NCBI RefSeq assembly: GCF_963921235.1
Contig: NC_086109.1
Coordinates: 65,658,001-65,722,000 of the forward strand
Direction: 5' to 3'
Length of the DNA: 64,000 bases
Source of the DNA: Mobula hypostoma
Lineage: Eukaryota
Shown here: positions 9,211 to 47,873 of the stretch, one piece after another
Layout: every line of letters begins with the position of its first letter
Position numbering within the stretch: position 1 is the stretch's first letter
Notes under the pieces: model-generated
Seen by the model: the letters and a program-made list of their open reading frames with translations, nothing else
The model's database searches: none
Told to the model about the DNA's origin: nothing
Made by a program: the position numbers and the translations under genes

Positions 9211-12084
9211 AGATCTCTTTTAAAACTTTCCCCTCTTGCCTTAAACCTATGCCTTCTGGTTTTGGACTCCCTTACACTGGGAAAAGGACTGTGACCATCC
9301 ACTTTTTTTTTTCCAAGGACATCTTCAATCTCTTATTGCTGCTGTCAGTGGTTCCCACATGCTTTAAAAGATGACTATCATACCAGTACCCAAGAAGATC
9401 AGGGAAGCTATCTTAATGACTATTGCCCATTTGCACTCACACCTACTGTGTGAAGTGCTTTGAGAGGTTATTCATGGTCAGAATCAATACCTACAGCGGA
9501 TGCAATCTCACTGGCTCTCCACTTGGCCTTGGATCTTCTGGACCATAGCAAAGCCTATTGATTATAGCTCAGCATTCAATACAACCATACCTTTAGTTCT
9601 AATCAAAAAGCTCCAAAACTTGAGCCTCTGAACGTCCTTCTGCAACTGGATCCTTGACTTCCTCACTGGGAGACCACAGACAGTGTGGATCAGAAATAAC
9701 ATCTACTCCTCACTGACAATCAACTTTGGTGCACCTCAAAGATATGTGCTCGGCCCACTGCCCTACTTTCTTTGCACTCATGGCTGTGTGGCTGGCTACA
9801 CATGAAGCACAGCAGTAAATTTGGCAATGATACAGCTTTTGTTGGCAGAATTTCAGATGGTGACGAGGAGTTGTACAGGAGTGGGTTAGATCAGCTGGTT
9901 GAGTGGTGTTGCAACAGCAACCTTGTACGCATTATCAGTAAGACCAAGGAATTGATTATGGACTTCAGGAAGGGGAAGTTGAGGGAATACAAACCAGTCC
10001 TTATTGAGGGATCAGCGGTGGAAAGGATGAGCAGTTTCAAGTTCCTGGGTGTCAACATCTCTGATGATCTATCCTGGGTCCAACATATTGATGCAATTAC
10101 AAAGAAGGCACCACAACAGCTATAATTCATTAGGAGCTCGAGGAGAAATGGTATGTCACCAAAGACCTGTAAATTTCTGCAGATGTACCGCAGACAGCGT
10201 TCTAACTGGTCTGGAATGGATATCGGGTGCAAGTTGAATAGGGACTTAACAATGGCATGTGGCAAAGGAAATGTCGCAGTAGTTATGGGGGATTTCAACA
10301 TGCATTTCAACATGAACTGGGAAAATCAGGTTGGTACTGGACCCCAGGATAGGGAGTTTGTAGAGTGCCTACGGGATGCATTTTTGGAGCAGCTTGTACG
10401 AGAGCTGACCAGGGATAAGGCTACTCTGGATTTAGTGTTGTGCAATGAACAGGATTTGATAAGTGAACTTGAAGTAAAGGAGCCATTAGGAGGTAGTGAC
10501 CATAATATGATAAGTTTTTATCTGCAAGTTGAGAGGGATAAGGGCAGATCAGAAGTGTCAGTATTGCAGTTGAACAAAGGAGACTATGGAGTCATGAGGG
10601 AGGAGCTGGCCAACGTTGACTGGTTGGATATCCTAGCAGAAAAGACAGTGGAACAGCAATGGCAGGTATTCTTGGGAATAATGCACAAGGTGCAAAATCA
10701 TTTCATCCCCCAGAGAAGGAAGGATTCAAAGGGGGGAAAGTGGCCACAGTGGTTGACAAAGGAAGTTAGAGATAGCATAGCATTAAAAAAGAAGTATAAC
10801 AGAGCTAAGGTGAGTGGGAAGACGGATGATTGGGAAATTTTTAAGGAGCAACAGAACTTAACTAAAAAGGCAATACGGGGAGAAAAACTGAGGTATGAAC
10901 ACAAGCTAGCTAGAAATATAAAGGAGGATAGCAAAGGTTTTTTTTAGGTATGTGAAGAGAAGGAAGACAGTTAAGAACAATGCTGGGCCCTTGAAGAATG
11001 AATTGGGAGAAATTGTTATGGGAAACAGAGAAATGGCAGACGAATTTAAGAAGTACTTTGGATCTGTCTTCACTAGGGAAAAGACACAAGCAATCTACCA
11101 GATGTATGGATGGGCCAAGGACATAGGGTAACAGAGGAACTGAAACAGATTGACATTAGGAAGGAAACAGTGATGAGTAGACTGATGGGACTGAAGGCTA
11201 ACAAATCCCCAGGTCCAGATGGTCTGCATCCTAGGGTACTAAAGGAGGTGGCTCTGGAAATTGCGGATGCATTGGTGATCATTTTCCAATGTTCCTTAGA
11301 TTCAGGATCAGTTCCTGAGGATTGGCAAATGGCTAATGTTATCCCACTTTTTAAGAAAGGAGGAAGGGAGAAAACAGAGAACTATCGCCCTGTTAGCCTA
11401 ACATCAGTAGTGGGGAAGATGCTGGAGTCCATTATTAAAGATGAAATAGCGGCATATCTTGATAGCAGTGATAGGATTGGGCCGAGCCAGCATGGATTTA
11501 CCAAGGGCAAATCATGCTTGACTAATCTATTGGAGTTTTTTGAGGATGTAACCAGGAAGATAGACGCGGGAGTTCCAGTGGATGTGGTCTACCTTGACTT
11601 TCAGAAGGCATTCAATAAGGTACCACAAAGGAGATTGGTGGGTAAAATCAGAGCTCATGGCATTGGGGGGAGGATATTGACATGGATAGAAAACTGGTTG
11701 GCAGATAGAAAGCAAAGGGTAGCAGTGAATGGGTGTTTCTCGGAATGGCAGGTGGTGACTAGTGGGGTGCCACAGGGCTCAGTATTGGGACCACAGCTGT
11801 TTACGATTTACGTCAATGATTTAGAGGAAGGCATTGTGAATAACATTAGCAAGTTTGCTGATGATACTAAGCTGGGTGGCAGTGTGACATGTGATGAAGA
11901 TGTTAGGAGAATTCAAGGTGACTTGGATAGGCTGGGTGAGTGGGCAGAAACTTGGCAGATGGCGTTTAATGTGAATAAGTGTGAGGTTATTCACTTTGGG
12001 AGCAAGAACAGGAAGGCAGATTATTATCTGAACGGTGTGGAGTTAGGTAAGGGAGAAATACAAAGAGATCTAGGAGTACTTGTT

Positions 12085-12216
12085 AACAACAGCAATTCTG
12101 CAGATGCTGGAAATTCAAGCAACACACATCAAAGTTGCTGGTGAATGCAGCAGGCCAGGCAGTATCTCTAGGAAGAGGTGCAGTCGACGTTTCAGGCCGA
12201 GACCCTTCGTCAGGAC
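12085..12216 (-). mobile_element. Short Penelope-derived insertion carrying a minimal hammerhead ribozyme motif
   Basis: Interrupts the CR1 RT between duplicated tgtt (12081-84 and 12217-20). Minus strand reads cagtc-CTGACGA-agg gtctcgg cct-GAAA-CG-TC-gactg (12218-12181). Confidence 0.8.
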
Positions 12217-12218
12217 TG
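12181..12218 (-). ncRNA. Minimal type I hammerhead ribozyme motif (intact core)
   Basis: CUGANGA and GAAA boxes, helix II AGG/CCU, palindromic ACGU helix III, GUC cleavage triplet, helix I CAGUC/GACUG. Confidence 0.7.
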
Positions 12219-13789
12219 TTCATCAGTCTCTGAAGGTGAATGAGCAAGTGCAGCAGGCAGTGAAGAAGGCTAATGGAATGATGGCCTTTATTACAAAGGG
12301 AATTGAGTACAAGAGCAAGGCAATCCTTTTGCATTTGTACAGGGCCCTGGTGAGACCACACCTGGAGTATTGTGTGCAGTTTTGGTCTCCAGGGTTAAGG
12401 AAGGACGTCCTGGCTGTGGAGGAGGTGCAGTGTAGGTTCACTACGTTAATTCCTGGGATGTCCGGACTGTCTTACGCAGAGAGGTTAGAGAGACTGGGCT
12501 TGTACACGCTGCAATTAAGGAGATTGAGGGGGGGATCTGATTGAGACAGATAAGATTATTAAGGGATTGGACAAGATAGAGGCAGGAAATATGTTCCAGA
12601 TGCTGGAAGAGTCCAGTACCAGAGGGCATGGTTTAAGAATAAGGGGTAGGTCATTTAGGACAGAGTTGAGGAGGAACTTCTTCTCCCAGAGAGTTGTGGA
12701 GGTGTGGAACGCGCTGCCTCAGAAGGCAGTGGAGGCCAATTCTCTGGATGCTTTCAAGAAGGAGCTAGATAGGTATCTTATGGATAGGGGAATCAAGGGT
12801 TATGGGGACAAGGCAGGAACCGGGTATTGATAGTAGATGATCAGCCATGATCTCAGAATGGCGGTGCAGGCTCGAAGGGCCGAATGGTCTACTTCTGCAC
12901 CTATTGTCTATTGAGAGTCCACTGAACCGGATTGGAAAAAGCTGCAGAAATTTGTAAACTCAGCCTGCTCCATCATGGGCTTTAGCCTCTCCAGCACTGA
13001 GGACACCTTCCAAAGGCAATGCCTCAGGAATTCATTAAGGACTCCCATCACTCAGTGTGTGCCCTCTTCTCACTGCTACATTCAAGTAGGAGGTACAGGA
13101 GCCTTCACTCACAACTCTGAATGATTGCACAATCTACAGACTCACTTTCAAGAACTCTGCAACTCATATTCTCAATATTATTTTTATTTGTAAAATTTAC
13201 CCATTCATTTCTCTTTAGAAGGTACAGATTGCCTTTCTTTTTCTAAAGGCAGTGAATTTCAGATTTTTACTCAACTAAATCTTTACATCCCTAACTAAAT
13301 CTTCATATCCCTCTACATCTTATATTCATTATTGATCCTTGAACTACTTGCTTATGTGTAATGTTTCTCTCTGTCCGATCTGACATAACCTGTTATGTAT
13401 TTATCGAACCTCCTCTCAGTATTCTTTGCCACAAGGAAAACAACCACAGCCTCTCCAGTCCATCCCTATAGCTGAAATCCCACAAATTGTAACTATCTGA
13501 CTCAACCTCTTCTCTGAAAGTTAAACACATGTACCAATGGAAATTGCAGTATTCTGCTTGATGCTCAGATTGATGGAACTTTGAATGATAAGGAAATCAA
13601 AGCATATTGAGTGTTGTTGAGTAAGTGAACAAGCCATGTCATTGAAAAGCATAGCATGGAAAATTTCATGCATAGTTAAATAGATTAAAAAACTCAAAAT
13701 AATATAAAGCCATCAGAAATGTGTATATCACTAACATAATGTCTGAATTCAAATGAATAGTTTTAGGGTCATAAAAGTTAGTGACCACT

Positions 13790-17100: not shown

Positions 17101-20100
17101 TGTTTTGTACAGTTTATAAATCTTGGAAAAATTCTACCTAACATGTTTTTTTTTGTTTGGCTGACGCTTATTGCACAGAATAGAGGTAGATCATTCAGCA
17201 GGACATGCAGGAGTCAGGATTGGAGATAGGCATGCACCAGACTAGGGAGGTATGGCAGAGTTCCGCCCTTGAAGGATGCTGGTGAACTAGACCACTAGAC
17301 TGAGGTTTATTTTCAACTATCCAGGACAACCATTGTGAATATCAAATAACCCTGTTTTGGGTTCAATGACTAAGCATTTGAAGCCTCCTGGTTAGGGAAT
17401 TCCAAAAATTCACCATCCTCTTGTTTAAGAAGTTTCTTATAATACCTGTCCTGAATTCCTGCCCCATATTTTCCAACTGTACTGAACACTGTTTCTATGA
17501 ACACCAGACTGGGGAAAGGACAACTTTGCATCTACCCCGTCAAGCCCCAGGAATTTTAAGTATCATCCCTGCAAACTGGGTTCAATTCTGCTGCTGTCTT
17601 TAAGGAGTTTGTAGTTTCACCCTGTGACTGTTGGTTTCTTCCAGATGCTTTGGTTCCCTCCCACATTCCAAAGACACATGGATTAGTAGGTTATTTAGCT
17701 GGATAGGTAATTGGGTGGTATGGGGATCATTGGGCCAATCTCTAAATTTACTGTTTGCCTTCCTAATTGCTTGGCAAACTTTCATGTTAACTTCAGTTGT
17801 TCCAGTAAAAGGATACTCAACTCATTCTGAAACCCCACATTTTTCAATCGCTCAGCAGTTAAAAACATACTCTGCTTTTCTATTGCCCAACCTCAATTTT
17901 TCCACATTGTTTCTTACTCAAAGCTTTTCTGTCTTCTTCCATGGAGATAGGCATAAAATTGTTGTTTAATTTCTCTGACATTTCGTTATCACTGAATATA
18001 ATCGCTCCCGTTTCAGATCGTAAGATATCCATATAAACTTTTAACTGATCTTTTTCGTCTTTTCAACATAAATCTTCTTGTTTTTATGCTTTTCAATAGA
18101 CTTCTTTTGTATTCTGTTTTCTTTTTTTAACAACATCCTCAAGGTTAAAAGTAAATTTAATATCAAAGTATATACCTGTCACCATACACATTTTCTTGCA
18201 GGCATACTCAATAAATCCAATAACCATAGTAGAATCGATGAAAAACCGCACAAACTGGGTGAACAACCAGTGTGCAAAAGACAATAGACTGTGCAAATAC
18301 AAAAAGAAAGTATAAATGACTGAATCAATGTATAAACAAACAAACGAGCAACCAATAGATATTGAGAACATAATGAAGAATCCTTGAAAGTGAGTCCATA
18401 GGTTGTTGGAACATTTCAGAGATGGGGCAAGTGAAATTAACCCCTTTGGTTCAAGAGCCTGATGGCTGAGGGGTAATAACTGTTCCTGAACCTACTGGTG
18501 TGAATCCTGACACTCCTGTACCATCTTCCTGATTTCAGCAGCAAGAAGAGAGCATGGCCTGACTGGTGCCCCTGATGATGGATGCTGCTTTACTGCAACA
18601 ATGCTCCATGTAGATGTGCTCAATGGTGTGGAGGGTTTTACCCATGATGGGCTGAGCTGTATCCAATACTTATAGGATTTTTCACTCAAAGGCCAGTCAA
18701 TATACTCTCCACCACACATCTATAGAAGTTTGTCAAAGTTTTAGGTGTCATGCCAAATCTTCACAAACTCCTAGGGAAGTAGATGCACTGCTGTATGTTC
18801 TTTATAATTGTACTTACAAGCTCGGCCCAGGACAGTTCCTCTGAAATTATAACACCAGGAAATTTAAAGTTTCCATCCCTGTCCACTTCTGATCCCCTGA
18901 TGAGGACTGGCTCATGGACCTCCAGCTTCCTCCTCCTTGGAGTCTATAATCAGCTCCTTGGTCTTGCTGACATTGAGTAAGAGGTTGTTATTATTGCACC
19001 AATCAGTCCCCCTCCTATATGCTGATTCATCACCACCTTTGATTTGGCTAATGGCAGTGGTGTCGTCAGCAGACTTGAATATGGCATTGAAGCTGTGCTT
19101 AGCTATGCAGTCATAGGTGTAAAGTGAGTAGAGCAGGATGCTAAGTACACAGCCTTGTGGTGCACCAGTGCTGATGGAGGTTATGGAGGAGATGTTGCCA
19201 ATCCATACTGACTGGGGTTTGAAAGTGTGGAAATCGTGGATCCAATTGCACAAGGAGGTATTGAGGCTAAGGTCTTGAAGCTTAATGATTAGTTTTGAGG
19301 GGATGATAGCATTGAAAGCCAAGCTGTAGTTGATAAAGATCATCTTGATGCATGCATCTTTACCATCCAGATGTTACAGGCTTGAGTGAAGATCCAATGA
19401 GATTGCATCTGCTGTGGCCCTTTTGTGCTGGTAGGCAAATTGGAACAGATCCAAATCACTTCTCTGAAAGGATTTGATATGTTTCATCACCACCTTCTCA
19501 AAACACTTCATCACTGTGGATGTAAGTGCTGTTGGATGATAGTCATTTAGGCAGGTTACCACATTCTTAGGCACCGGTATAATCGAAGCCTGCTTCAAAC
19601 AGGTCGGTACCTCAGACTGCCAAAGTAAGAGGTTGAAGATCTCAGTGAACAGTCTAGTCAGTTAATCAACACAGGTCTTTAGTACTTGGTCTATCTGGGC
19701 TGGATGCTTTCCATGGGTTCACCTTCCTTACAATTTGCTCACACCTTGGCCTCAGAGACTGAAGTCACAGGATCATCAGGGGCTGTGGGAGTTCAGAAAG
19801 GTTCCTGTATAATTTGACAGTCAAAGTGAGCATAGAAAAGCATTGAGCTCATCTGGAAGTGAAGCACTGTTGTCACTTTGCCTCTTGATTTTACTTTAAA
19901 AGAGGTGAATGTATTCAAAGCTATGCCACAACTGATGAGCGTCCGACATTGATTCATGTTTTGTCCGGAATTGCCACTTCACCTATGAGATGGCTTTCCA
20001 GTGACCTTACGTGGACCTCTTGTAACTTCCTTGGTCACTAGACATAAATACCTTTGACCTGGCCGTTAGTAGATTATGGATCTCATGGTTCATCCAGGGC

Positions 20101-20853
20101 TTCTGATTGGGGAAATCTCTAAATAATTTTATGAGGACACACTGGTCCACAACGGTTTTTATAATGTCCATGACAACCATGGTGAATTTACTCAGATCCA
20201 CAAATGAGTCCTTGAACAGAGCCCTAAACACTGACTTGAAACAATCCCATAGCTGCTCCTCTGTCTCCGTGACCACCTGTTGTCCTATTCTCTGGAGCCT
20301 TGCTCTTTAGCCTCTTCCTGTACGCAGGTAGGAGAAGGACAGCCAAGTGATCAGATTTCCAAAGGTGCCTTCTGGGCATGGAACAGTAAGCATTCCTTAT
20401 CTTCGTATAACAGTGGTCTAGTGTTTCGGGACCTTGGGAGCTACAGGCTATATGCTGATGGTAATTGGGCAGCAATTTCTTTAAATAAGCCAGATTGAAA
20501 TCCCCGACTATGATATGGAATAGCATTCAGATGGACAGTTTCTTGTTTGATAATCGCTCATGAAGTATCTCAAGTCCCTGATTACAATCGGCCGCTGGTG
20601 GTATGTCAGCTGTGGTCAGGATCACGGAGGAGAACTCCCTTGGTAAATAGAATGGACGACATTTGTTTGATCATTAGATGTTCAAGATCAGGGGAACACA
20701 AGTTCAACAAAACCACCACATAGAGTTCATCATGAAACACACACCTCTGTCTCTTGCCTTTTCTGAATCCACAGTTCAGTCCATCCTGTGTATTTAGAAG
20801 CTTTCAAGTCTGATTGCCGTATTTGGCATGCTGGGAGTAAGCCATGTCTCAGT

Positions 20854-21311
20854 CAGTCAGTGGGTGCCGTCCCAAATCCAGGGTTGGCGGCTATGCACTT
20901 CCATCTTCTTCGATCTTGTGACAGCAGTGAGTACAGCCTCTCCTCCAGCTTGTTCTCGCTGGCCGCCTTGGCACCGCCTGCTGCCGCCCCCGCCAAACTT
21001 GAGCGTCCAGCCGCGGCTGCTTCTTCGAGCTCGGCCCTTCCTTAGGTGGAGGCCTTGGGCAGGTCCAGGCACACGGTGCAGCGCCCAAGTTCATCATGTC
21101 TCTTCTAACTAGGTGCATAGCATACGATTCGTAGATATGTGGTGAGGCTTTAATCTCTTCCACAGAAGATGGCCTTTGGCTTACAAGGAGTTCATCCGTC
21201 CTTTGTCAGTTCTTGTTTTTCTCAGTCCTGCTGGGTGTCTTCACACCCTCCTCACCAGACTGTCCGGTGGGGGAGCTGGCCTAAGTCGCCGACTATAGCC
21301 CCTGGCCGAGC
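20854..21311 (-). mobile_element. 458-bp chimeric non-autonomous retroposon with an RTE-like 3' end and a captured host-gene fragment
   Basis: 13-bp TSD gccatgtctcagt (20841-20853 and 21312-21324). The 3' part encodes QDRRRWKCIAANPGFGT followed by an (ACTG)n tail. Confidence 0.75.
20921..21082 (-). pseudogene. ZFTRAF1: Circularly permuted fragment of ZFTRAF1/CYHR1 N-terminal coding sequence
   Basis: Minus strand: gc TGC ACC GTG TGC CTG GAC CTG CCC AAG GCC TCC ([11 protein letters not shown]) precedes ...[12 protein letters not shown]+t. Joining the two ends restores [22 protein letters not shown], matching recalled ZFTRAF1 [22 protein letters not shown]. Confidence 0.85.
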
Positions 21312-21789
21312 GCCATGTCTCAGTAAAACGCAGAATAAAACAATTTCTCATTTCTCTTCAATACACTAATCTTGCCCTCAGGTCCTCAATCGTTCTCCAG
21401 CGACTACATATTTGCAAACAAGATGCTGCGTTAGAGGAGGACTCATTTTTTTTTTGTGTTTCAGCCTGGCTTGGAATACCTCTGTCCTGCCTTGCTTCCA
21501 GCCATAGTGATGGACCTTTGCTTAAAAATGCTGTACCTGCTTGCTTGAGAGTTAAATCTACCCAGTTCTTCAGATGATCGTGGGATCTGTAGTTCATTAA
21601 GTCGATTTAAAAGTACATCGCTTGAAGGGAAATTACATGCTGTAGACTGTAGTGAGAGTAATTCAAAAGAAGATTATTTACTGGTCTTCTTCTGTTGAAT
21701 TCTGTAACTTATCAATTTTCAGGTTTAATGCTTCATTTGGCATCACAGCCTGCCTTTTGTTTTGCTCTACTACATTCAACTTCTGGACA

Positions 21790-23470
21790 CTGAGTACACA
21801 GCAAAATGTATATTCGGTTGCTGTTAATCGATTACAGCTCAGCATTCAATATCATCATCCCCTCAGTATTAATCGCAAAGTGTCTAAACCTGAGCCTTTG
21901 TACCTCCCCCTGCAAATGGATCCTTCATTTCCTTATTGGGAGACCACAGTTAGTATGGATTGGTGATGACATCTCCTCCTTGCTGTTGGATCTGGATATA
22001 ATGTTGTCCAGATTGTTGTTGGGAAGTCAAAAATGAGGTGGAAATGTCACGGTTACAGCCATTTTGTTAGCTGCTCACCATAATACAGGTCAGATCGACT
22101 CAACCTGTATCAGCAAGGCAAGTAACACAAAGGCAAAAACAAAAGACAAATGTTCACTATTTATTGTGCAAAGTAGTTGAAGCTGATTAGATAAGGGAGT
22201 TGTCTTTAGAAGGAACAGTCTGTGAAACAACAAGGACAATCTTGACTTGTGCTACCATAATATCTTGGGCTCACAGACAAAGAAGCGATCGTAGTATTTA
22301 GAACCATGTACAAATAACTGAAAATCTACCAATAATTTACAGGCAAACAGCTGAATATACAAATATATAAGCAAGAATAACAAAATTTTAAAAAACAGAA
22401 AAGTAACAATTGAAATAGCAGTTTAGACTTTAATCCAGCATTGCTGACAATCAACACAGGCACTCCTCTAGGCTAGTGCTCGATTCTCTCTATACTCATG
22501 TCTGTGTAGATAAGCACCACTCAAATGCATATGCACTGTACAGGATTTATACTTTCTCCCCACTGACTGCTTGGGTTTCCTCCAGGTGCTCTAGTTTCCT
22601 CCCACATTCTAAAGACCTATGGGTTAGTAGGTTTATTGGTCACATGTGTATAATTGGGTAGTGCGAGCTTGTTGGGCCAGAAGGCCCTGTTACTGTGCTG
22701 TATCTCTAAACAAAATAAAAATAAAAATTCAGAGATGACACCACTGTTGTTGGAAAAACCTTAGATGGCAATGAGGAGTCGTATAGGAGTGAGATAGATC
22801 AGCTGGATGAGTATTGTCACAACAACATCAGCAAGACTAGGAAATTGACTGTGGACTGCAGGAATGGGAAGTCAGGAGAACGTGCACTAGTCCTCAGTGA
22901 GAGATCAGTGTTGGAAAGGGTGAGCAGCTTCAAGTTCATGGTTGTCAGCACCTCAAAGGATCTATCTTGGGCCCAGTACATTATTGCAATAATGAAGAAT
23001 GCATGCCATTGACGCTGCTTTTTAAGGAGTTTGTGGAGATTTGAATGACACCAAATACTCCCTTAAGTTTCTATAGATGTATTCTGGAGAGCATGCTGAC
23101 TGGTTTCATCACAGCCTGGTATGGAGGCTTCAATGCACAGGATCATAGAATCTGCAGACTCGGCCAGTTCTATCGTGAGCACAACCCTCCCTAGCATCAA
23201 AGTCACCTTAAAGAGGTGATGCCTGAAGAAGGCAGCACACATCATTAAGGACTGTCTCCATCCAAGATATGCCCTCTTCTTGTTACAGTACTACCTTCAG
23301 GGAGGAGGTACAGGAGCCTGAAGGTACACACTCAATGATTCAGGTACAGCACCTTCCCCTCTGCCACCGGATTTCTGAAAGGTCCATGATCCCATGAACA
23401 CTAGCTTACTATTTCATTTTTGCACCATTTATGTATTTGATAATTTATTACCTTCGTTGGATATTTATTA
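21790..23470 (+). mobile_element. Degraded Rex1/Babar-like LINE RT and 3' end with nested insertions
   Basis: [19 protein letters not shown]...[13 protein letters not shown]; the RT continues from ~22440 after an insertion; V-SINE nested at ~22520-22720. Confidence 0.7.
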
Positions 23471-32759: not shown

Positions 32760-34046
32760 TGTGAAAGGAAAATCATATCTGACGAATCTCATAGAATTTT
32801 TTGAGGATGTAACTAGTAATGTGGATAGGGGAGAACCAGTGGATGTGGTATATTTGGATTTTCAAAAGGCTTTTGACAAGGTCCCACACGGGAGATTAGT
32901 GTGCAAACTTAAAGCACACGGTATTGGGGGTATGGTATTGATGTGGATAGAGAATTGGTTGGCAGACAGGAAGCAAAGAGTGGGAATAAACGGGACCTTT
33001 TCAGAATGGCAGTCAGTGACGAGTGGGGTACTGCAAGGCTCAGTGCTGGGACCCCAGTTGTTTACAATATATATTAATGACTTAGACGAGGGAATTAAAT
33101 GCAGCATCTCCAAGTTTGCGGATGACACAAAGCTGGGTGGCAGTGTTAGCTGTGAGGAGGATGCTAAGAGGATGCAGGGTGACTTGGATAGGTTAGGTGA
33201 GTGGGCAAATTCATGGCAGATGCAATTTAATGTGGATAAATGTGAGGTTACCCACTTTGGTGGCAAGAACGGGCAAACAGATTATTATCTGAATGGTGGT
33301 CGATTAGGAAAAAGGGAGGTGCAACAAGACCTGGGTGTCATTGTACACCAGTCATTGAAAGTGGGCATGCAGGTACAGCAGGCAGTGAAAAAGGCAAGTG
33401 GTATGCTGGCATTTATAGCGAGAGGATTCGAGTACAGGAGCAGGGAGGTACTACTGCAGTTGTACAAGGCCTTGGTGAGACCACACCTGGAGTATTGTGT
33501 GCAGTTTTGGTCCCCTAATCTGAGGAAAGACATTCTTGCCATAGAGGGAGTACAAAGAAGGTTCACCAGATTGATTCCTGGGATGGCAGGCCTTTCATAT
33601 GAAGAAAGACTGGATCGGCTAGGCTTATACTTTCTGGAATTTAGAAGATTGAGGGGCGATCTTATTGAAATGTATAAAATTCTAAAGGGATTGGACAGGC
33701 TAGATGTAGGAAGATTGTTCCCGATGTTGGGGAAGTCCAGAACAAGGGGTCACAGTTTGAGGATAAAGGGGAAGCCTTTTAGGACCGAGATGAGGAAAAA
33801 CTTCTTCACACGGAGAGTGGTGAATCTGTGGAATTCTCTGCCACAGGAAACAGTTGAGGCCAGTTCATTGGCTATATTTAAGAGGCAGTTAGATATGGAC
33901 CTTGTAGCTAAAGGGATTGTGGGTATGGAGAAAAGGCAGGTACAGGGTTCTGAGTTGGATGATCAGCCATGATCGTACTGAATGGCGGTGCAGGCTCGAA
34001 GGGTGGAATGGCCTACTCCTGCACCTATTTTCTATGTTTCTGTGTT
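32760..34046 (+). mobile_element. Young 5'-truncated CR1 LINE (403-aa uninterrupted RT C-terminal ORF)
   Basis: ORF 32761-33972: YLDFQKAFDKVPH, QGSVLGP, KFADD, LVRPHLEYCVQFW; (CTATGTTT) tail. Confidence 0.95.
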
Positions 34047-45879: not shown

Positions 45880-46785
45880 ATACACACAAAGTACTCTGCA
45901 GATGCTGGGGTCAAAGCAGCACTCACAACATGCTGGAGGAACTCAGCAGGTCAGGCAGCATCCGTGGAAATGATCAGTCAAAGTTTTGGGCCGGAACCCT
46001 TCGTCAGGACTGTAGAGGGAAGGGGCAGAGGCCATGTAAAGAAGGTGGGGGAGGGTGGGAAGGAAAAGGCTGGTAGGTTCCAGGTGAAAAACCAGTAAAG
46101 GGAAAGATAAAGGGGTGGGGGAGGGGAGGCAGGGAGGTGATAGGCAGGAAAGGTGAAGAAGGAATAGGGGAAAACACAGTGGGTGGTAGAAGGAGGCAGA
46201 ACCATGAGGGAGGTGATAGGCAGCTGGAGGAGGGGGCAGAGTGAAATAGGGATAGGGGAAGGGAGAGGGAGGGCATTACTGGAAGTTGGAGAATTCTATG
46301 TTCATACCAAGGGGCTAGAGACTACCTAGACAGTATATGAGGTGCTGCTCCTCCAACCTGAGTTTAGCCTCATCATGGCAGTAGAGGAGGCCATGTATGG
46401 ACATATCCGAAAGAGAATGTGAAGCAGAGTTCAAATGTGTGGCAACCGGGAGATCCTGTCTGTTGTGGCGGATGGAGCGGAGGTGCTCGACGAAGCGGTC
46501 CCCCAGTCTGCGTCGGGTTTCACTGATGTAGTGGAGGCCGCACCGGGAGCACTGAATGCAATAGATGACCCCAACAGACTCAGAAGTGAAGTGTTGCTTC
46601 ACCTGGAAGGACTGTTTGGGGCCCTGAATAGTGCCAAGAGAGGAGGTGTAGCACTTCCGCTTACAGGGGATAAGTGCCGGGTGGGAGATCCGTGGGGAGG
46701 GACCGATCCCTGCAGAAAGTGGAGAGGGGTGGAGGGGGAAAGATGTGCTTAGTGGTGGGGTCCAGTTGAAGGTGGCATGAAGGTG
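45880..46785 (-). mobile_element. Penelope-like element (GIY-YIG domain + pLTR)
   Basis: ORF 46315-46821 GVIYCIQCSRCGLHYISETRRRLGDRFVEH...LEEQHLIY; hammerhead at ~45975-46012 with GAAA changed to AAAA. Confidence 0.9.
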
Positions 46786-47873
46786 AACATCATTCACATT
46801 CATCCCAAATGGATCCACCACCTAATCTGGAATATGCAAATCCAGCAGGTCTCTGAACCGAAATTCCTATCAGTGCGCAGTTGATTCAAATGTTCAAGGT
46901 ATACAATCAGATCATCATCTTGCAATTCTATTTTAAGAGTGCCAGTGAAGGAAATCACATAAATGTGATGTTCGGTATTGTTGCAGAAAAGTTTGAGTTT
47001 TCAAAGCCATTATATTTTCCAGCAGAATATTATTTCCTAAGAAATAGTTCTTGACTTCTTCAAAAATAGTTTCACCTTTGGTATCTGTTTTAAGCTTTCA
47101 AGCAAAATGTATTCTCTCACTGGTCTAATCGTCAATCTAAAACCTAACATAGGTCATCAGGAGGGCTTCATTATCTTGTAATGTGCTTTCATCGATTTGC
47201 AGGCCAAACTTCTTAACTTGCAGTTGTGTAACTAGTTGTTTTTCCACATCATCTGACATTTCATCAATACACCTTGATACTGATGAGTTGCTCAAGAGGA
47301 TGGATGGTTTGAATGCTTTCAAATGTGCTGTGATTCATAACAGTAGAAATTGCAACAGAAACTTCAGGCAGAATCAATGATTCACCCACAGTACGTGGCT
47401 TGCCAGCTTTTACAATTAAATTTGAAATCTCATAGGATGCAAGTAAACTTTTGTCTATCTTAGCTGCATTTTCACTAAACATTTGCTTTACGTTCGGCCT
47501 TGATTGAAAATTATCAGGCGGTTTTTTGAAGTAATCCAGTGTTTTATCTTCCTTGTCCTTATGTGCTGTCTTCAAGTGTTTCCTCAGCTGACATGGCCAC
47601 ATGCTTTCATTTGAGTGCGTGGTCATACAAATTAGACACAATGGCATCCTCTTGACCTGTGCAGATGGAATAAATAACGCCATGGGCAAGATACCAAATG
47701 GAAAAATGCCAACAATAGTTCTTTGCCTTAGTAGCCATGGATAATTTCATAGAAAAATAAAGAAAATTTTAAAATAAAGAAAAAAATGTGTGTATGTGCA
47801 TGTGTGTGCGTGCATGTGTGTGCATGCGTGCGTGCATCTTTCATGTCTTTATATGGTGGCCAGTGGTGTAGTA

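What the first reader, a model, noticed from the sequence alone, without database searches (positions are those of the whole stretch)
20921..21082. Base-exact circularly permuted ZFTRAF1/CYHR1 coding fragment: a fossil of an integrated small circle
SEEN: on the minus strand a 162-bp GC/CpG-rich block starts gc|TGC ACC GTG TGC CTG GAC CTG CCC AAG GCC TCC ([11 protein letters not shown]). It then jumps at ~21047 to PKEGPSSKKQPRLDAQV and, after one frameshift, [24 protein letters not shown] plus a single t. Joining the last base to the first gives ctg ctg t|gc tgc acc = L L C C T, with no base lost or gained. KNOWN (recalled): ZFTRAF1/CYHR1 reads ..[32 protein letters not shown], so the downstream part of the gene sits in front of the upstream part. 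INFERENCE: a B-A order with a seamless A/B join is what results when a circle is opened at a new point and integrated. The roughly nucleosomal size, the apparent origin in a GC-rich 5' exon and a closure point that is not a splice site fit microDNA-type eccDNA better than a back-spliced circRNA. Germline fixation of such a circle inside a retroposon would be unusual.
Basis: partly seen in the sequence, partly recalled or inferred. Interest (0 to 1): 0.9.

Follow-up and report, generated by a model that had tools for sequence, protein, structure and literature searches.

The report
Retroposon copy with permuted exon piece
The 162-base stretch really is a piece of a RING-finger gene's first exon (ZFTRAF1/CYHR1 by recall) with its two halves swapped to the base. 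It is not a DNA circle that landed here: it is one worn copy of a very abundant jumping element, shared by several related species, whose founder already carried the swapped piece.

Summary
Observation confirmed. Against a natural exon 1 fetched here (P0002-P0004, loci L001-L006), the block gives two matches in swapped order that abut exactly. Rotated, it gives one 65-66-nt match (88-91% identity, E about 1e-20). That exon reads [25 protein letters not shown], then a GTAAAC donor.

The local reading is not supported. The block lies inside a 458-bp insertion (20854-21311) flanked by an exact 13-bp target duplication, which splits the endonuclease motif FTETW|L of an older LINE. Contigs from DNA runs of two species cover piece A and the 71-nt tail at 13,000-70,000 summed depth. 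The flanking LINE gets 400-2,000. Contigs run straight through the A/tail boundary and end in many different flanks. Words from the 5' part are held by the same six organisms.

The "frameshift" is a private 16-nt net deletion. The family form is 178 bp, has an open frame, and reads YSVL.

So this is one copy of a high-copy LINE-tailed retroposon family. The permutation arose once, in the founder. Both closure ends lie inside exon 1, 9 nt short of the donor in the homologues, so ordinary back-splicing is disfavoured. A small circle of RNA or DNA, or jumps between two adjacent RNA fragments, remain open.

The scan had already flagged the same block at 8 or more other loci of this genome.

The parts
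21312..21324 (-). Upstream copy of the target-site duplication ACTGAGACATGGC. It is the host LINE's own codons for ..(F)TETW..
   Evidence: Exact 13-nt direct repeat, only 2 matches in the window, 0.12 expected. Removing the insert restores the frame ..CFILRFTETWLTPSMPNTAIRLESF...
21083..21311 (-). 5' part of the retroposon (229 bp). Origin unknown. No tRNA, 5S or 7SL head.
   Evidence: No tRNA, no Rfam family, no Pfam family. Its 31-mers are held by DNA/RNA runs of organisms A, B, C, D, F and H, including very small runs, so it is a high-copy family part.
21048..21082 (-). Piece B: the last 35 nt of the captured exon-1 segment, encoding (C)[11 protein letters not shown], the first residues of a Sina-type RING finger.
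   Evidence: 88-91% identical to L001/L004/L006 exon 1, directly after the match of A's end. The spliced homologue peptide hits PF21362 Sina_RING at 34.9 bits (cut-off 29.3), starting at this Cys. In the homologues exon 1 runs 9 nt further, GTG TAY CAG|GTAAAC.
20921..21047 (-). Piece A: the upstream 127 nt (143 nt in the family form) of the same exon-1 segment, ending ..[10 protein letters not shown](L/V)L + first base of the Cys codon.
   Evidence: The last 31 nt match L001 at 93.5% and abut B's match exactly. The family majority at 20927/20928 gives YSVL, as in P0002-4. Summed contig depth is 13,000-71,000 in X3 and X8.
21004..21006 (-). Private deletion scar: 1 nt in place of 17 nt of the family form.
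   Evidence: Loose ends at 21004 (behind) and 21006 (before) in 14-21 contigs per DNA run carry the extra CCGAGGCCGTGTCGGCC (+ strand). With it, A reads through in one frame.
20850..20920 (-). LINE-type 3' tail of the retroposon (about 71 nt), ending in (ACTG)n.
   Evidence: Highest depth in the region, 21,000-65,000. The family ends at 20849/20850 with many different flanks (60-63 contigs, agreement about 0.4). Other elements share only this tail and diverge exactly at 20921 (loose ends at 20918).
20841..20853 (-). Downstream copy of the target-site duplication. Its first 4-5 nt could equally be the end of the (ACTG)n tail, so the duplication is 8-13 bp.
18912..20840 (-). Host element: an older, decayed LINE (reverse transcriptase and endonuclease regions) into which the retroposon inserted. 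It continues upstream at 21325 to about 21600.
   Evidence: RVT_1 hits. ORF fragments. Contig depth 400-2,000, 30-100 times lower than the insert.

Best explanation
The block is an internal module of a non-autonomous, LINE-tailed retroposon. Its layout is: 229-bp 5' part, 178-bp permuted exon-1 module, 71-nt tail ending in (ACTG)n.

Shown:
- This copy was inserted whole by target-primed reverse transcription into the endonuclease region of an older LINE, making an 8-13-bp target duplication.
- It then decayed: CpG changes and a 16-nt net deletion.
- The family is very abundant and is shared by several related species.
- The module is an exact circular permutation of a contiguous stretch of the first exon of a conserved Sina-RING gene (ZFTRAF1/CYHR1 by recall).

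Inferred:
- The permutation arose once, when the family's founder was made.
- My preferred mechanism has the partner LINE's reverse transcriptase copy the 71-nt tail and then switch to a roughly 178-nt circular (or end-to-end joined) RNA from exon 1. It goes once round, stops where it meets its own product, and switches to the template of the 5' part.
- That gives 5' part-B-A-tail, all in one sense, with no base lost at the opening point.

Odds for the founding step: RNA circle about 0.4; jumps between two adjacent RNA fragments about 0.25; DNA circle about 0.2; other about 0.15. The confidence given is for the locus-level and family-level reading, not for the founding step.
For: Insertion: exact 13-bp flanking repeat. 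The host LINE frame ..FTETW|LTPSMPN.. is restored when the insert is removed.

Family:
- In DNA runs of organism A (X3) and organism C (X8), summed contig depth is 13,000-71,000 over 20846-20985 and 21014-21046, against 400-2,000 over the LINE flank.
- 1,426 and 1,260 contigs were laid.
- Contigs cross 20921 without a break (records 3, 9, 17, 26).
- The family ends at 20849/20850 in many different flanks.
- Words of the block and of the 5' part are held by organisms A-H, even in runs of 60-120 million letters.
- 30 of the 45 block words that avoid this copy's private changes (and the low-depth 20986-21013 zone) span the B|A joint, so runs holding 4-5 of 11 sampled words almost certainly hold the joint (an inference).
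- The family form is 178 bp with an open frame and YSVL.

Parent: searches give 22/22 residues, swapped abutting HSPs, and a single HSP after rotation. Exon structure. RING.

Orientation: the module and the retroposon are in the same sense.

The scan's earlier notes list the same 165-180-bp permuted block in RTE-tailed elements at 8 or more other loci. These are leads only.
Against: - That other copies carry B in front of A therefore rests on word sharing and on unchecked notes.
- Summed contig depth is not a copy number, by the tool's own warning.
- The partner LINE was not found in the window, and 'RTE' is not verified.
- No Pol III head was found, so how the element is transcribed is unknown.
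- The parent gene of this species was never seen. The exon boundary is taken from three homologues of unnamed organisms.
- Nothing here separates an RNA circle from a DNA circle or from fragment jumping.
Confidence: 0.85

Rival explanations
1. One reading: a small DNA circle (microDNA/eccDNA) from ZFTRAF1 exon 1 was opened and integrated at this very locus, inside a retroposon copy, and fixed in the germline.
For: Exact one-unit permutation. Size 162-178 bp. GC-rich first-exon origin. The closure point is not the exon's donor.
Against: Piece A is continuous with the tail in thousands of contigs with different flanks, in two species. Block and 5'-part words are held in six or more organisms. 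The whole 458 bp has one target duplication. The same block is noted at 8 or more other loci.
Confidence: 0.02
2. Founder made at DNA level: a 178-bp eccDNA from exon 1, cut once, was ligated into a break in a master copy of the retroposon, which then amplified.
For: A single cut plus ligation gives exactly one unit, with nothing needed to stop a polymerase. Size and GC-rich 5' exon origin fit what is described for microDNA (reviewed in PMC9527254). A 2-nt overlap (CC) at the B|A joint is possible if the parent reads CCA CCT AAG, as the homologues read CCA CCC AAG.
Against: Orientation would be random, yet the module is in the retroposon's sense. Both ligations would have to be loss-free. No re-integrated microDNA that became part of a mobile element is known to me.
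Confidence: 0.2
3. No circle: the reverse transcriptase made end-to-end template jumps across two neighbouring fragments of one cleaved ZFTRAF1 mRNA. Fragment a..p was copied first, then fragment p..b. The shared cut at p gives the base-exact fit.
For: Run-off at a 5' end followed by a jump to another RNA's 3' end is an established property of non-LTR reverse transcriptases (own knowledge: R2 enzyme studies). Every piece of the element is then one RNA fragment, all in one sense. Dong et al. also warn that open-ended RNAs with close ends can mimic circles (PMC4897178).
Against: It needs two fragments of the same rare mRNA to be picked in succession, and four jumps instead of two. No filler bases are seen at any of the three joints.
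Confidence: 0.25
4. Canonical back-spliced circRNA retro-copied, as in circRNA-derived pseudogenes.
For: Non-colinear order in a retro-copied sequence, many copies, retroelement context, as for mouse circRFWD2 copies (PMC4897178). The base after B in the parent is GT (Val codon GTG/GTT in all three homologues), so a cryptic donor is conceivable.
Against: In three homologues the real donor is 9 nt downstream of B's end. A's start lies in the middle of the exon-1 coding region, about 60 codons after the ATG, where no acceptor is expected. First exons have no upstream acceptor.
Confidence: 0.08
5. Linear excerpt from a tandem duplication in the parent gene or in an intermediate element.
For: Not excluded directly, because the parent locus of this species was not seen.
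Against: An excerpt would have to start and end at the same phase of two adjacent units to the base (about 1 chance in 178). The three homologous exons show no such duplication.
Confidence: 0.05
6. Assembly chimera or chance resemblance.
For: None found.
Against: RNA-run contigs match this copy exactly on both sides: 20650-20855, 20956-21040 and 20950-21046 with 0 differences. X1 holds 10 of 11 sampled words of the block. The rotated match has E 1e-20 to 1e-22.
Confidence: 0.01

Closest known systems
circRNA-derived pseudogenes (Dong et al. 2016, PMC4897178)
   Same: Retro-copied host-gene sequence in non-colinear order. Many copies from one source (33 or more for mouse circRFWD2). Retroelement sequences in the flanks. 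No poly(A).
   Different: There the reversed joint is a back-splice exon-exon junction. Here both ends of the unit lie inside one exon, 9 nt short of the donor in the homologues. The unit is exactly one turn and is an internal module of a LINE-tailed retroposon with orders of magnitude more copies.
SVA_F1 (MAST2 exon 1) and pt_SVA_D6 (STK40 exon 1) composite retroposons (PMC6139936)
   Same: [quoted passage not shown]
   Different: Those exons are linear, sit at the 5' end, were acquired by splicing at the exon's true 3' end, and reached about 84-94 copies. Here the piece is permuted, internal, does not end at the donor, and is far more abundant.
microDNA / small eccDNA and their reintegration (review PMC9527254)
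   Same: Size near 180 bp, GC-rich 5' exon source, a closure point not at a splice site, and possibly a short microhomology.
   Different: No DNA circle is shown. The sequence is not a single-locus insertion but a heritable module of a mobile family.
Chimeric retrocopies made by LINE reverse-transcriptase template switching (U6-L1 and similar; own knowledge, Buzdin and colleagues 2002-2003)
   Same: Several unrelated RNA-derived pieces joined head to tail in one sense, with one target duplication for the whole.
   Different: Known chimeras are colinear copies of each template and are mostly single-copy. This one holds a permuted template and became a master element.
LINE-tail-dependent SINEs of fishes and elasmobranchs (stringent 3'-tail recognition, PMC4176376; elasmobranch SINEs, PMC5499810)
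   Same: A short non-coding element with a LINE-type 3' tail ending in a short tandem repeat, a target duplication, and very high copy number.
   Different: No tRNA, 5S or 7SL head was detected. The body holds a protein-coding exon piece.

Membership tests
LINE-mobilised non-autonomous retroposon (SINE-like) | Whole element flanked by a target-site duplication | tested here: met
   Exact 13-bp repeat at 20841-20853 and 21312-21324. The host LINE frame is restored on removal.
LINE-mobilised non-autonomous retroposon (SINE-like) | Many dispersed copies with different flanks | tested here: met
   1,260-1,426 contigs per DNA run. Summed depth is 30-100 times that of the flanking LINE. 60-63 contigs have unlike flanks at 20849.
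LINE-mobilised non-autonomous retroposon (SINE-like) | 3' tail shared with an autonomous partner LINE | tested here: inconclusive
   Other elements share only the 71-nt tail and diverge at 20921. No partner LINE with this tail is in the window. The label 'RTE' is unverified.
Classical SINE | Pol III head derived from tRNA, 5S or 7SL RNA | tested here: not met
   ARAGORN found 0 genes. Rfam found no family at E up to 1 except a chance snoRNA hit of 16 bits.
circRNA-derived pseudogene | Parts of the parent in reversed (non-colinear) order | tested here: met
   Swapped, exactly abutting HSPs. A single HSP after rotation.
circRNA-derived pseudogene | The reversed joint is a back-splice junction (exon 3' end joined to exon 5' end) | tested here: not met
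   In L001, L004 and L006, exon 1 ends 9 nt after B's end (CAG|GTAAAC), and A's start is inside the coding part of exon 1. Caveat: these are homologues, not this species' own gene.
Re-integrated microDNA/eccDNA | A circular DNA intermediate | not testable with these tools
   Needs circle-enriched DNA sequencing of these species.
Re-integrated microDNA/eccDNA | An insertion event at this locus, independent of retroposition | tested here: not met
   The block is continuous with the family tail in thousands of contigs. One target duplication encloses the whole 458 bp.
ZFTRAF1/CYHR1 gene (source of the fragment) | Sequence identity to the gene's exon 1 across the A|B join | tested here: met
   22/22 residues and 57-59 of 69 nt match natural exon 1 of P0002-4 / L001, L004, L006. 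Exon 2 completes a Sina_RING. The gene's name itself is from recall only. No tool named it.

The most novel reading that the evidence does not exclude
The founder of a retroposon family with tens of thousands of copies, spread over several cartilaginous-fish species, was built by copying (or ligating in) a roughly 178-nt circle, RNA or DNA, excised from inside the first exon of ZFTRAF1. This would make it the first mobile-element family whose body preserves a non-back-splice small circle.
Probability: 0.45. Interest if true: 0.7.

Novelty: new variant of a known kind. Interest (0 to 1): 0.45.

Why it matters
At this locus nothing unusual happened. It is an ordinary retroposon insertion, and the scan should treat the many 'captured circle' notes in this genome as copies of one family.

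At the family level it is a neat natural record. An exon fragment was captured by a non-LTR retroposon in exactly permuted order and then amplified enormously. If the founder template was a small circle that did not arise by back-splicing, the family would be heritable evidence that such circles (microDNA, or ligated RNA fragments) can feed back into the germline genome through retroelements.

It also gives thousands of dated copies from which the original joint can be rebuilt. And it parallels the repeated uptake of GC-rich first exons by primate SVA elements.

Tried and rejected
I did not send that piece again, so B and the B|A joint were never laid.
- Attempts to fetch the parent gene that failed:
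  - PDB search with the rotated peptide: 0 hits.
  - Full-text search for the peptide strings: 0.
  - Rotated 36-aa query: too short.
  - Rotated 41-aa query: no candidate.
  - Exhaustive phmmer of the 62-aa ORF against 1.84 billion representatives: only P0001, a spurious tandem-repeat protein.
  - A two-row alignment made to widen the length filter: 1,843 candidates, none scored.
  - Pfam on the raw window peptides: nothing meaningful.
  - A JGI metagenome scan for a family-consensus 29-mer: 0.
- The rotated family-consensus 60-mer finally worked.
- No other copy of the insert and no partner LINE tail is in the window.
- The tail fold is not better than shuffles (z = -1.08), so no structural claim is made.
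- No tRNA or Rfam head was found.
- Considered and rejected: local eccDNA integration, assembly chimera, chance resemblance, canonical back-splice.

Full report
**1. What is in the sequence.**
- A 35-nt piece B (21082-21048) reads gc + TGC ACC GTG TGC CTG GAC CTG CCC AAG GCC TCC, which is [11 protein letters not shown].
- It is followed directly by a 127-nt piece A (21047-20921). A reads PPKEGPSSKKQPRLD.. and, after a frame change, ..[27 protein letters not shown] plus one t.
- Rotating the block (A then B) gives ..[22 protein letters not shown] in one frame.
- A and B are GC-rich: 65% and 71%. The surroundings are about 42-50%.

**2. Is it really a permuted gene piece?**
Several routes to the parent gene failed. 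A search with the rotated, family-corrected 60-residue reading then returned three natural proteins of 99-105 residues.
- All three read ..PPKK(R/K)..(E)(S/A)[26 protein letters not shown], followed by a few intron-encoded residues.
- BLASTP gives 22 of 22 identical residues across the A|B join (E 6e-15).
- Their DNA was fetched as L001-L006.

- The window block in its own order gives two HSPs in swapped order that abut without gap or overlap. In L001, block 132-162 maps to 417-447 and block 1-34 maps to 448-481. In L006 the ranges are 411-441 and 442-475.
- The rotated block gives one HSP of 65-66 nt at 88-91% identity, E 1e-20 to 1e-22.
- In all three loci the exon continues for 9 nt after B's end (GTG TAY CAG) and then meets a canonical donor, GTAAAC.
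- In L001, about 1.25 kb downstream, exon 2 reads [32 protein letters not shown].
- The spliced peptide passes Pfam's cut-off for the Sina-type RING finger, starting at the Cys of CTVC (PF21362, 34.9 bits against 29.3).

No tool supplied a name, and the organisms of L001-L006 are not given. This species' own gene was not seen.

**3. What surrounds it.**
- The block lies in a 458-bp insert (20854-21311) bounded by an exact 13-bp direct repeat, ACTGAGACATGGC. It has 2 matches in the window where 0.12 are expected.
- The insert interrupts a decayed minus-strand LINE (RVT_1 hits).
- Taking the insert out restores the LINE's frame through the endonuclease motif ..CFILRFTETW|LTPSMPNTAIRLESF...
- The insert therefore came in as one unit with a target-site duplication. 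That is the mark of target-primed reverse transcription.
- From 5' to 3' it consists of a 229-bp part of unknown origin, B, A, and a tail of about 71 nt that ends in (ACTG)n.
- No tRNA-like or other known RNA head is present.

**4. It is one copy of a very abundant family.**
Contigs of four public runs were laid on 20650-21046.
- In DNA runs of organism A (X3) and of a different organism C (X8), summed contig depth is 13,000-71,000 over 20846-20985 and 21014-21046. It is 400-2,000 over the flanking LINE. The tool warns that this is not a copy number, but the contrast is 30- to 100-fold.
- 1,426 and 1,260 contigs were laid.
- Contigs run straight across 20921, the supposed end of the captured piece (for example records 3, 9, 17, 26).
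- The similarity ends at 20849/20850, where 60-63 contigs per run continue into unlike flanks (agreement about 0.4). This is as expected for many insertion sites.
- A minority of contigs share only the tail and diverge exactly at 20921. This places the A|tail joint independently of any reading of the gene.
- Words of the 162-bp block are held by runs of organisms A-H. Words of the 5' part are held by A, B, C, D, F and H, including runs of only 60-120 million letters, where only highly repeated DNA assembles.
- Of the 45 31-mers of the block that avoid this copy's private changes and the low-depth 20986-21013 zone, 30 span the B|A joint. Low-coverage runs holding 4-5 of 11 sampled words therefore almost certainly hold that joint. 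This is an inference, not a direct reading.
- The scan's earlier notes describe the same 165-180-bp permuted block inside 'RTE-tailed' elements at 8 or more other loci of this genome. One follow-up reached the same family reading. I treat these as leads.

**5. The window copy is worn.**
- The family majority differs from it at 20949, 20928, 20927, 20919, 20899 and 20880. Several of these are CpG decay.
- The majority at 20927/20928 turns YSLL into YSVL, exactly as in P0002-4.
- Most members carry 17 nt where the window has 1 nt at 21005. With them the module is 178 bp, the length given in the other notes.
- With those 17 nt, A reads through in one frame: ..KKQPRLEADTASGSSLAG...

**6.
- No circle integrated here.
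- The permuted module is a family trait inherited from the master element, and this locus is an ordinary retroposon insertion.
- A circle can only belong to the founding of the family, before organisms A and C diverged.

**7. How the founder most likely arose (inference).**
An exact one-unit permutation with no base lost at the opening point (..GCTGT|GCTGC..) needs either a closed template or two templates that share one cut.

(a) RNA circle, which I prefer (about 0.4). The partner LINE's reverse transcriptase copies the tail and switches to a small circular or end-joined RNA of the exon-1 segment. It goes once round, stalls at its own product, and switches again. This uses two switches. It predicts the observed common sense orientation of all parts, and it fits how chimeric retrocopies are known to form.

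(b) End-to-end jumps across two adjacent fragments of one cleaved mRNA (about 0.25). This explains the exact fit without any circle. Dong et al. give a similar caveat.

(c) A 178-bp DNA circle cut once and ligated into a master copy (about 0.2). This gives one unit automatically, and size and source fit microDNA. Orientation would be arbitrary, and both ligations must be loss-free.

(d) A canonical back-spliced circRNA is disfavoured. In the homologues B ends 9 nt before the donor, and A starts deep inside the coding part of a first exon. The base after B is GT in all three, so a cryptic donor cannot be excluded.

(e) An excerpt from a tandem duplication needs a 1-in-178 coincidence.

The B|A joint may hide a 2-nt overlap (CC), if the parent reads CCA CCT AAG as the homologues read CCA CCC AAG. 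That would fit (a), (b) or (c) alike.

**8. Comparison with what is known.**
- It works like a LINE-tail-dependent non-autonomous retroposon. It fails the Pol III-head criterion of a classical SINE.
- The capture of a GC-rich first exon recalls SVA_F1 (MAST2) and pt_SVA_D6 (STK40). Those exons are linear, 5'-terminal and acquired by splicing.
- The reversed order recalls circRNA-derived pseudogenes, of which the mouse circRFWD2 group is also multi-copy and flanked by retroelement sequence. The back-splice criterion is not met here.
- I found no description of a retroposon family with a permuted intra-exonic module. This literature search was limited.

**9. Verdict.**
- Observation confirmed.
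- Interpretation partly supported: the permutation is real and is not at the splice donor, but the event is not local and the DNA-circle origin is unproven.
- Novelty: a new variant of a known kind (chimeric LINE-tailed retroposon with a captured exon piece).
- Interest is moderate. This locus is ordinary and the scan has met the family many times. The family's founding event is a real curiosity worth one focused study.

Noticed in passing
window 20850-20920 (loose ends at 20918): A second kind of element shares only the 71-nt tail and continues upstream with a different sequence (sense ..GAGGCCAGAAAAAGAG + CG + tail). It may be the partner LINE's 3' end or a sister retroposon. It was not found in the window.
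   Followed up: partly
window 20650-20855, 20950-21046: Contigs from RNA-labelled runs X1 and X2 match this very copy with 0 differences, including the private deletion region. X24 holds all sampled words of the 5' part. The locus may be transcribed (for example within a host transcript), or the libraries may contain DNA.
   Followed up: no
window 10153-12544 (+): A LINE with long open frames: a 264-aa endonuclease (Exo_endo_phos_2), a 344-aa reverse transcriptase (RVT_1, 105 bits), and a 154-aa continuation. It looks much younger than the LINE that hosts the insert.
   Followed up: partly
window 32761-33972 (+): A 403-aa open reverse-transcriptase frame of the same kind of LINE as at 11110-12544.
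   Followed up: partly
window 46315-46821 (-): A 168-aa ORF whose C-terminal half (..VIYCIQCSRCGLHYISETRRRLGDRFVEHLRSI..) looks by eye like a GIY-YIG nuclease domain of a Penelope-like element. Pfam gave no hit at E up to 0.001.
   Followed up: partly
window 21806-22036 and 22476-22661 (+): LINE reverse-transcriptase fragments in the opposite orientation just upstream of the host LINE, suggesting nested or adjacent old insertions.
   Followed up: no
The tool says this is no evidence of anything. It meant the B|A joint could not be examined in reads.
   Followed up: no
P0001: The only hit of the exhaustive protein search was a 695-aa tandem-repeat protein (unit about 60 aa..RRYALLSEEHRRW..). 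It matches by chance on RLYSLLSQDRRRW and is unrelated to the finding.
   Followed up: yes
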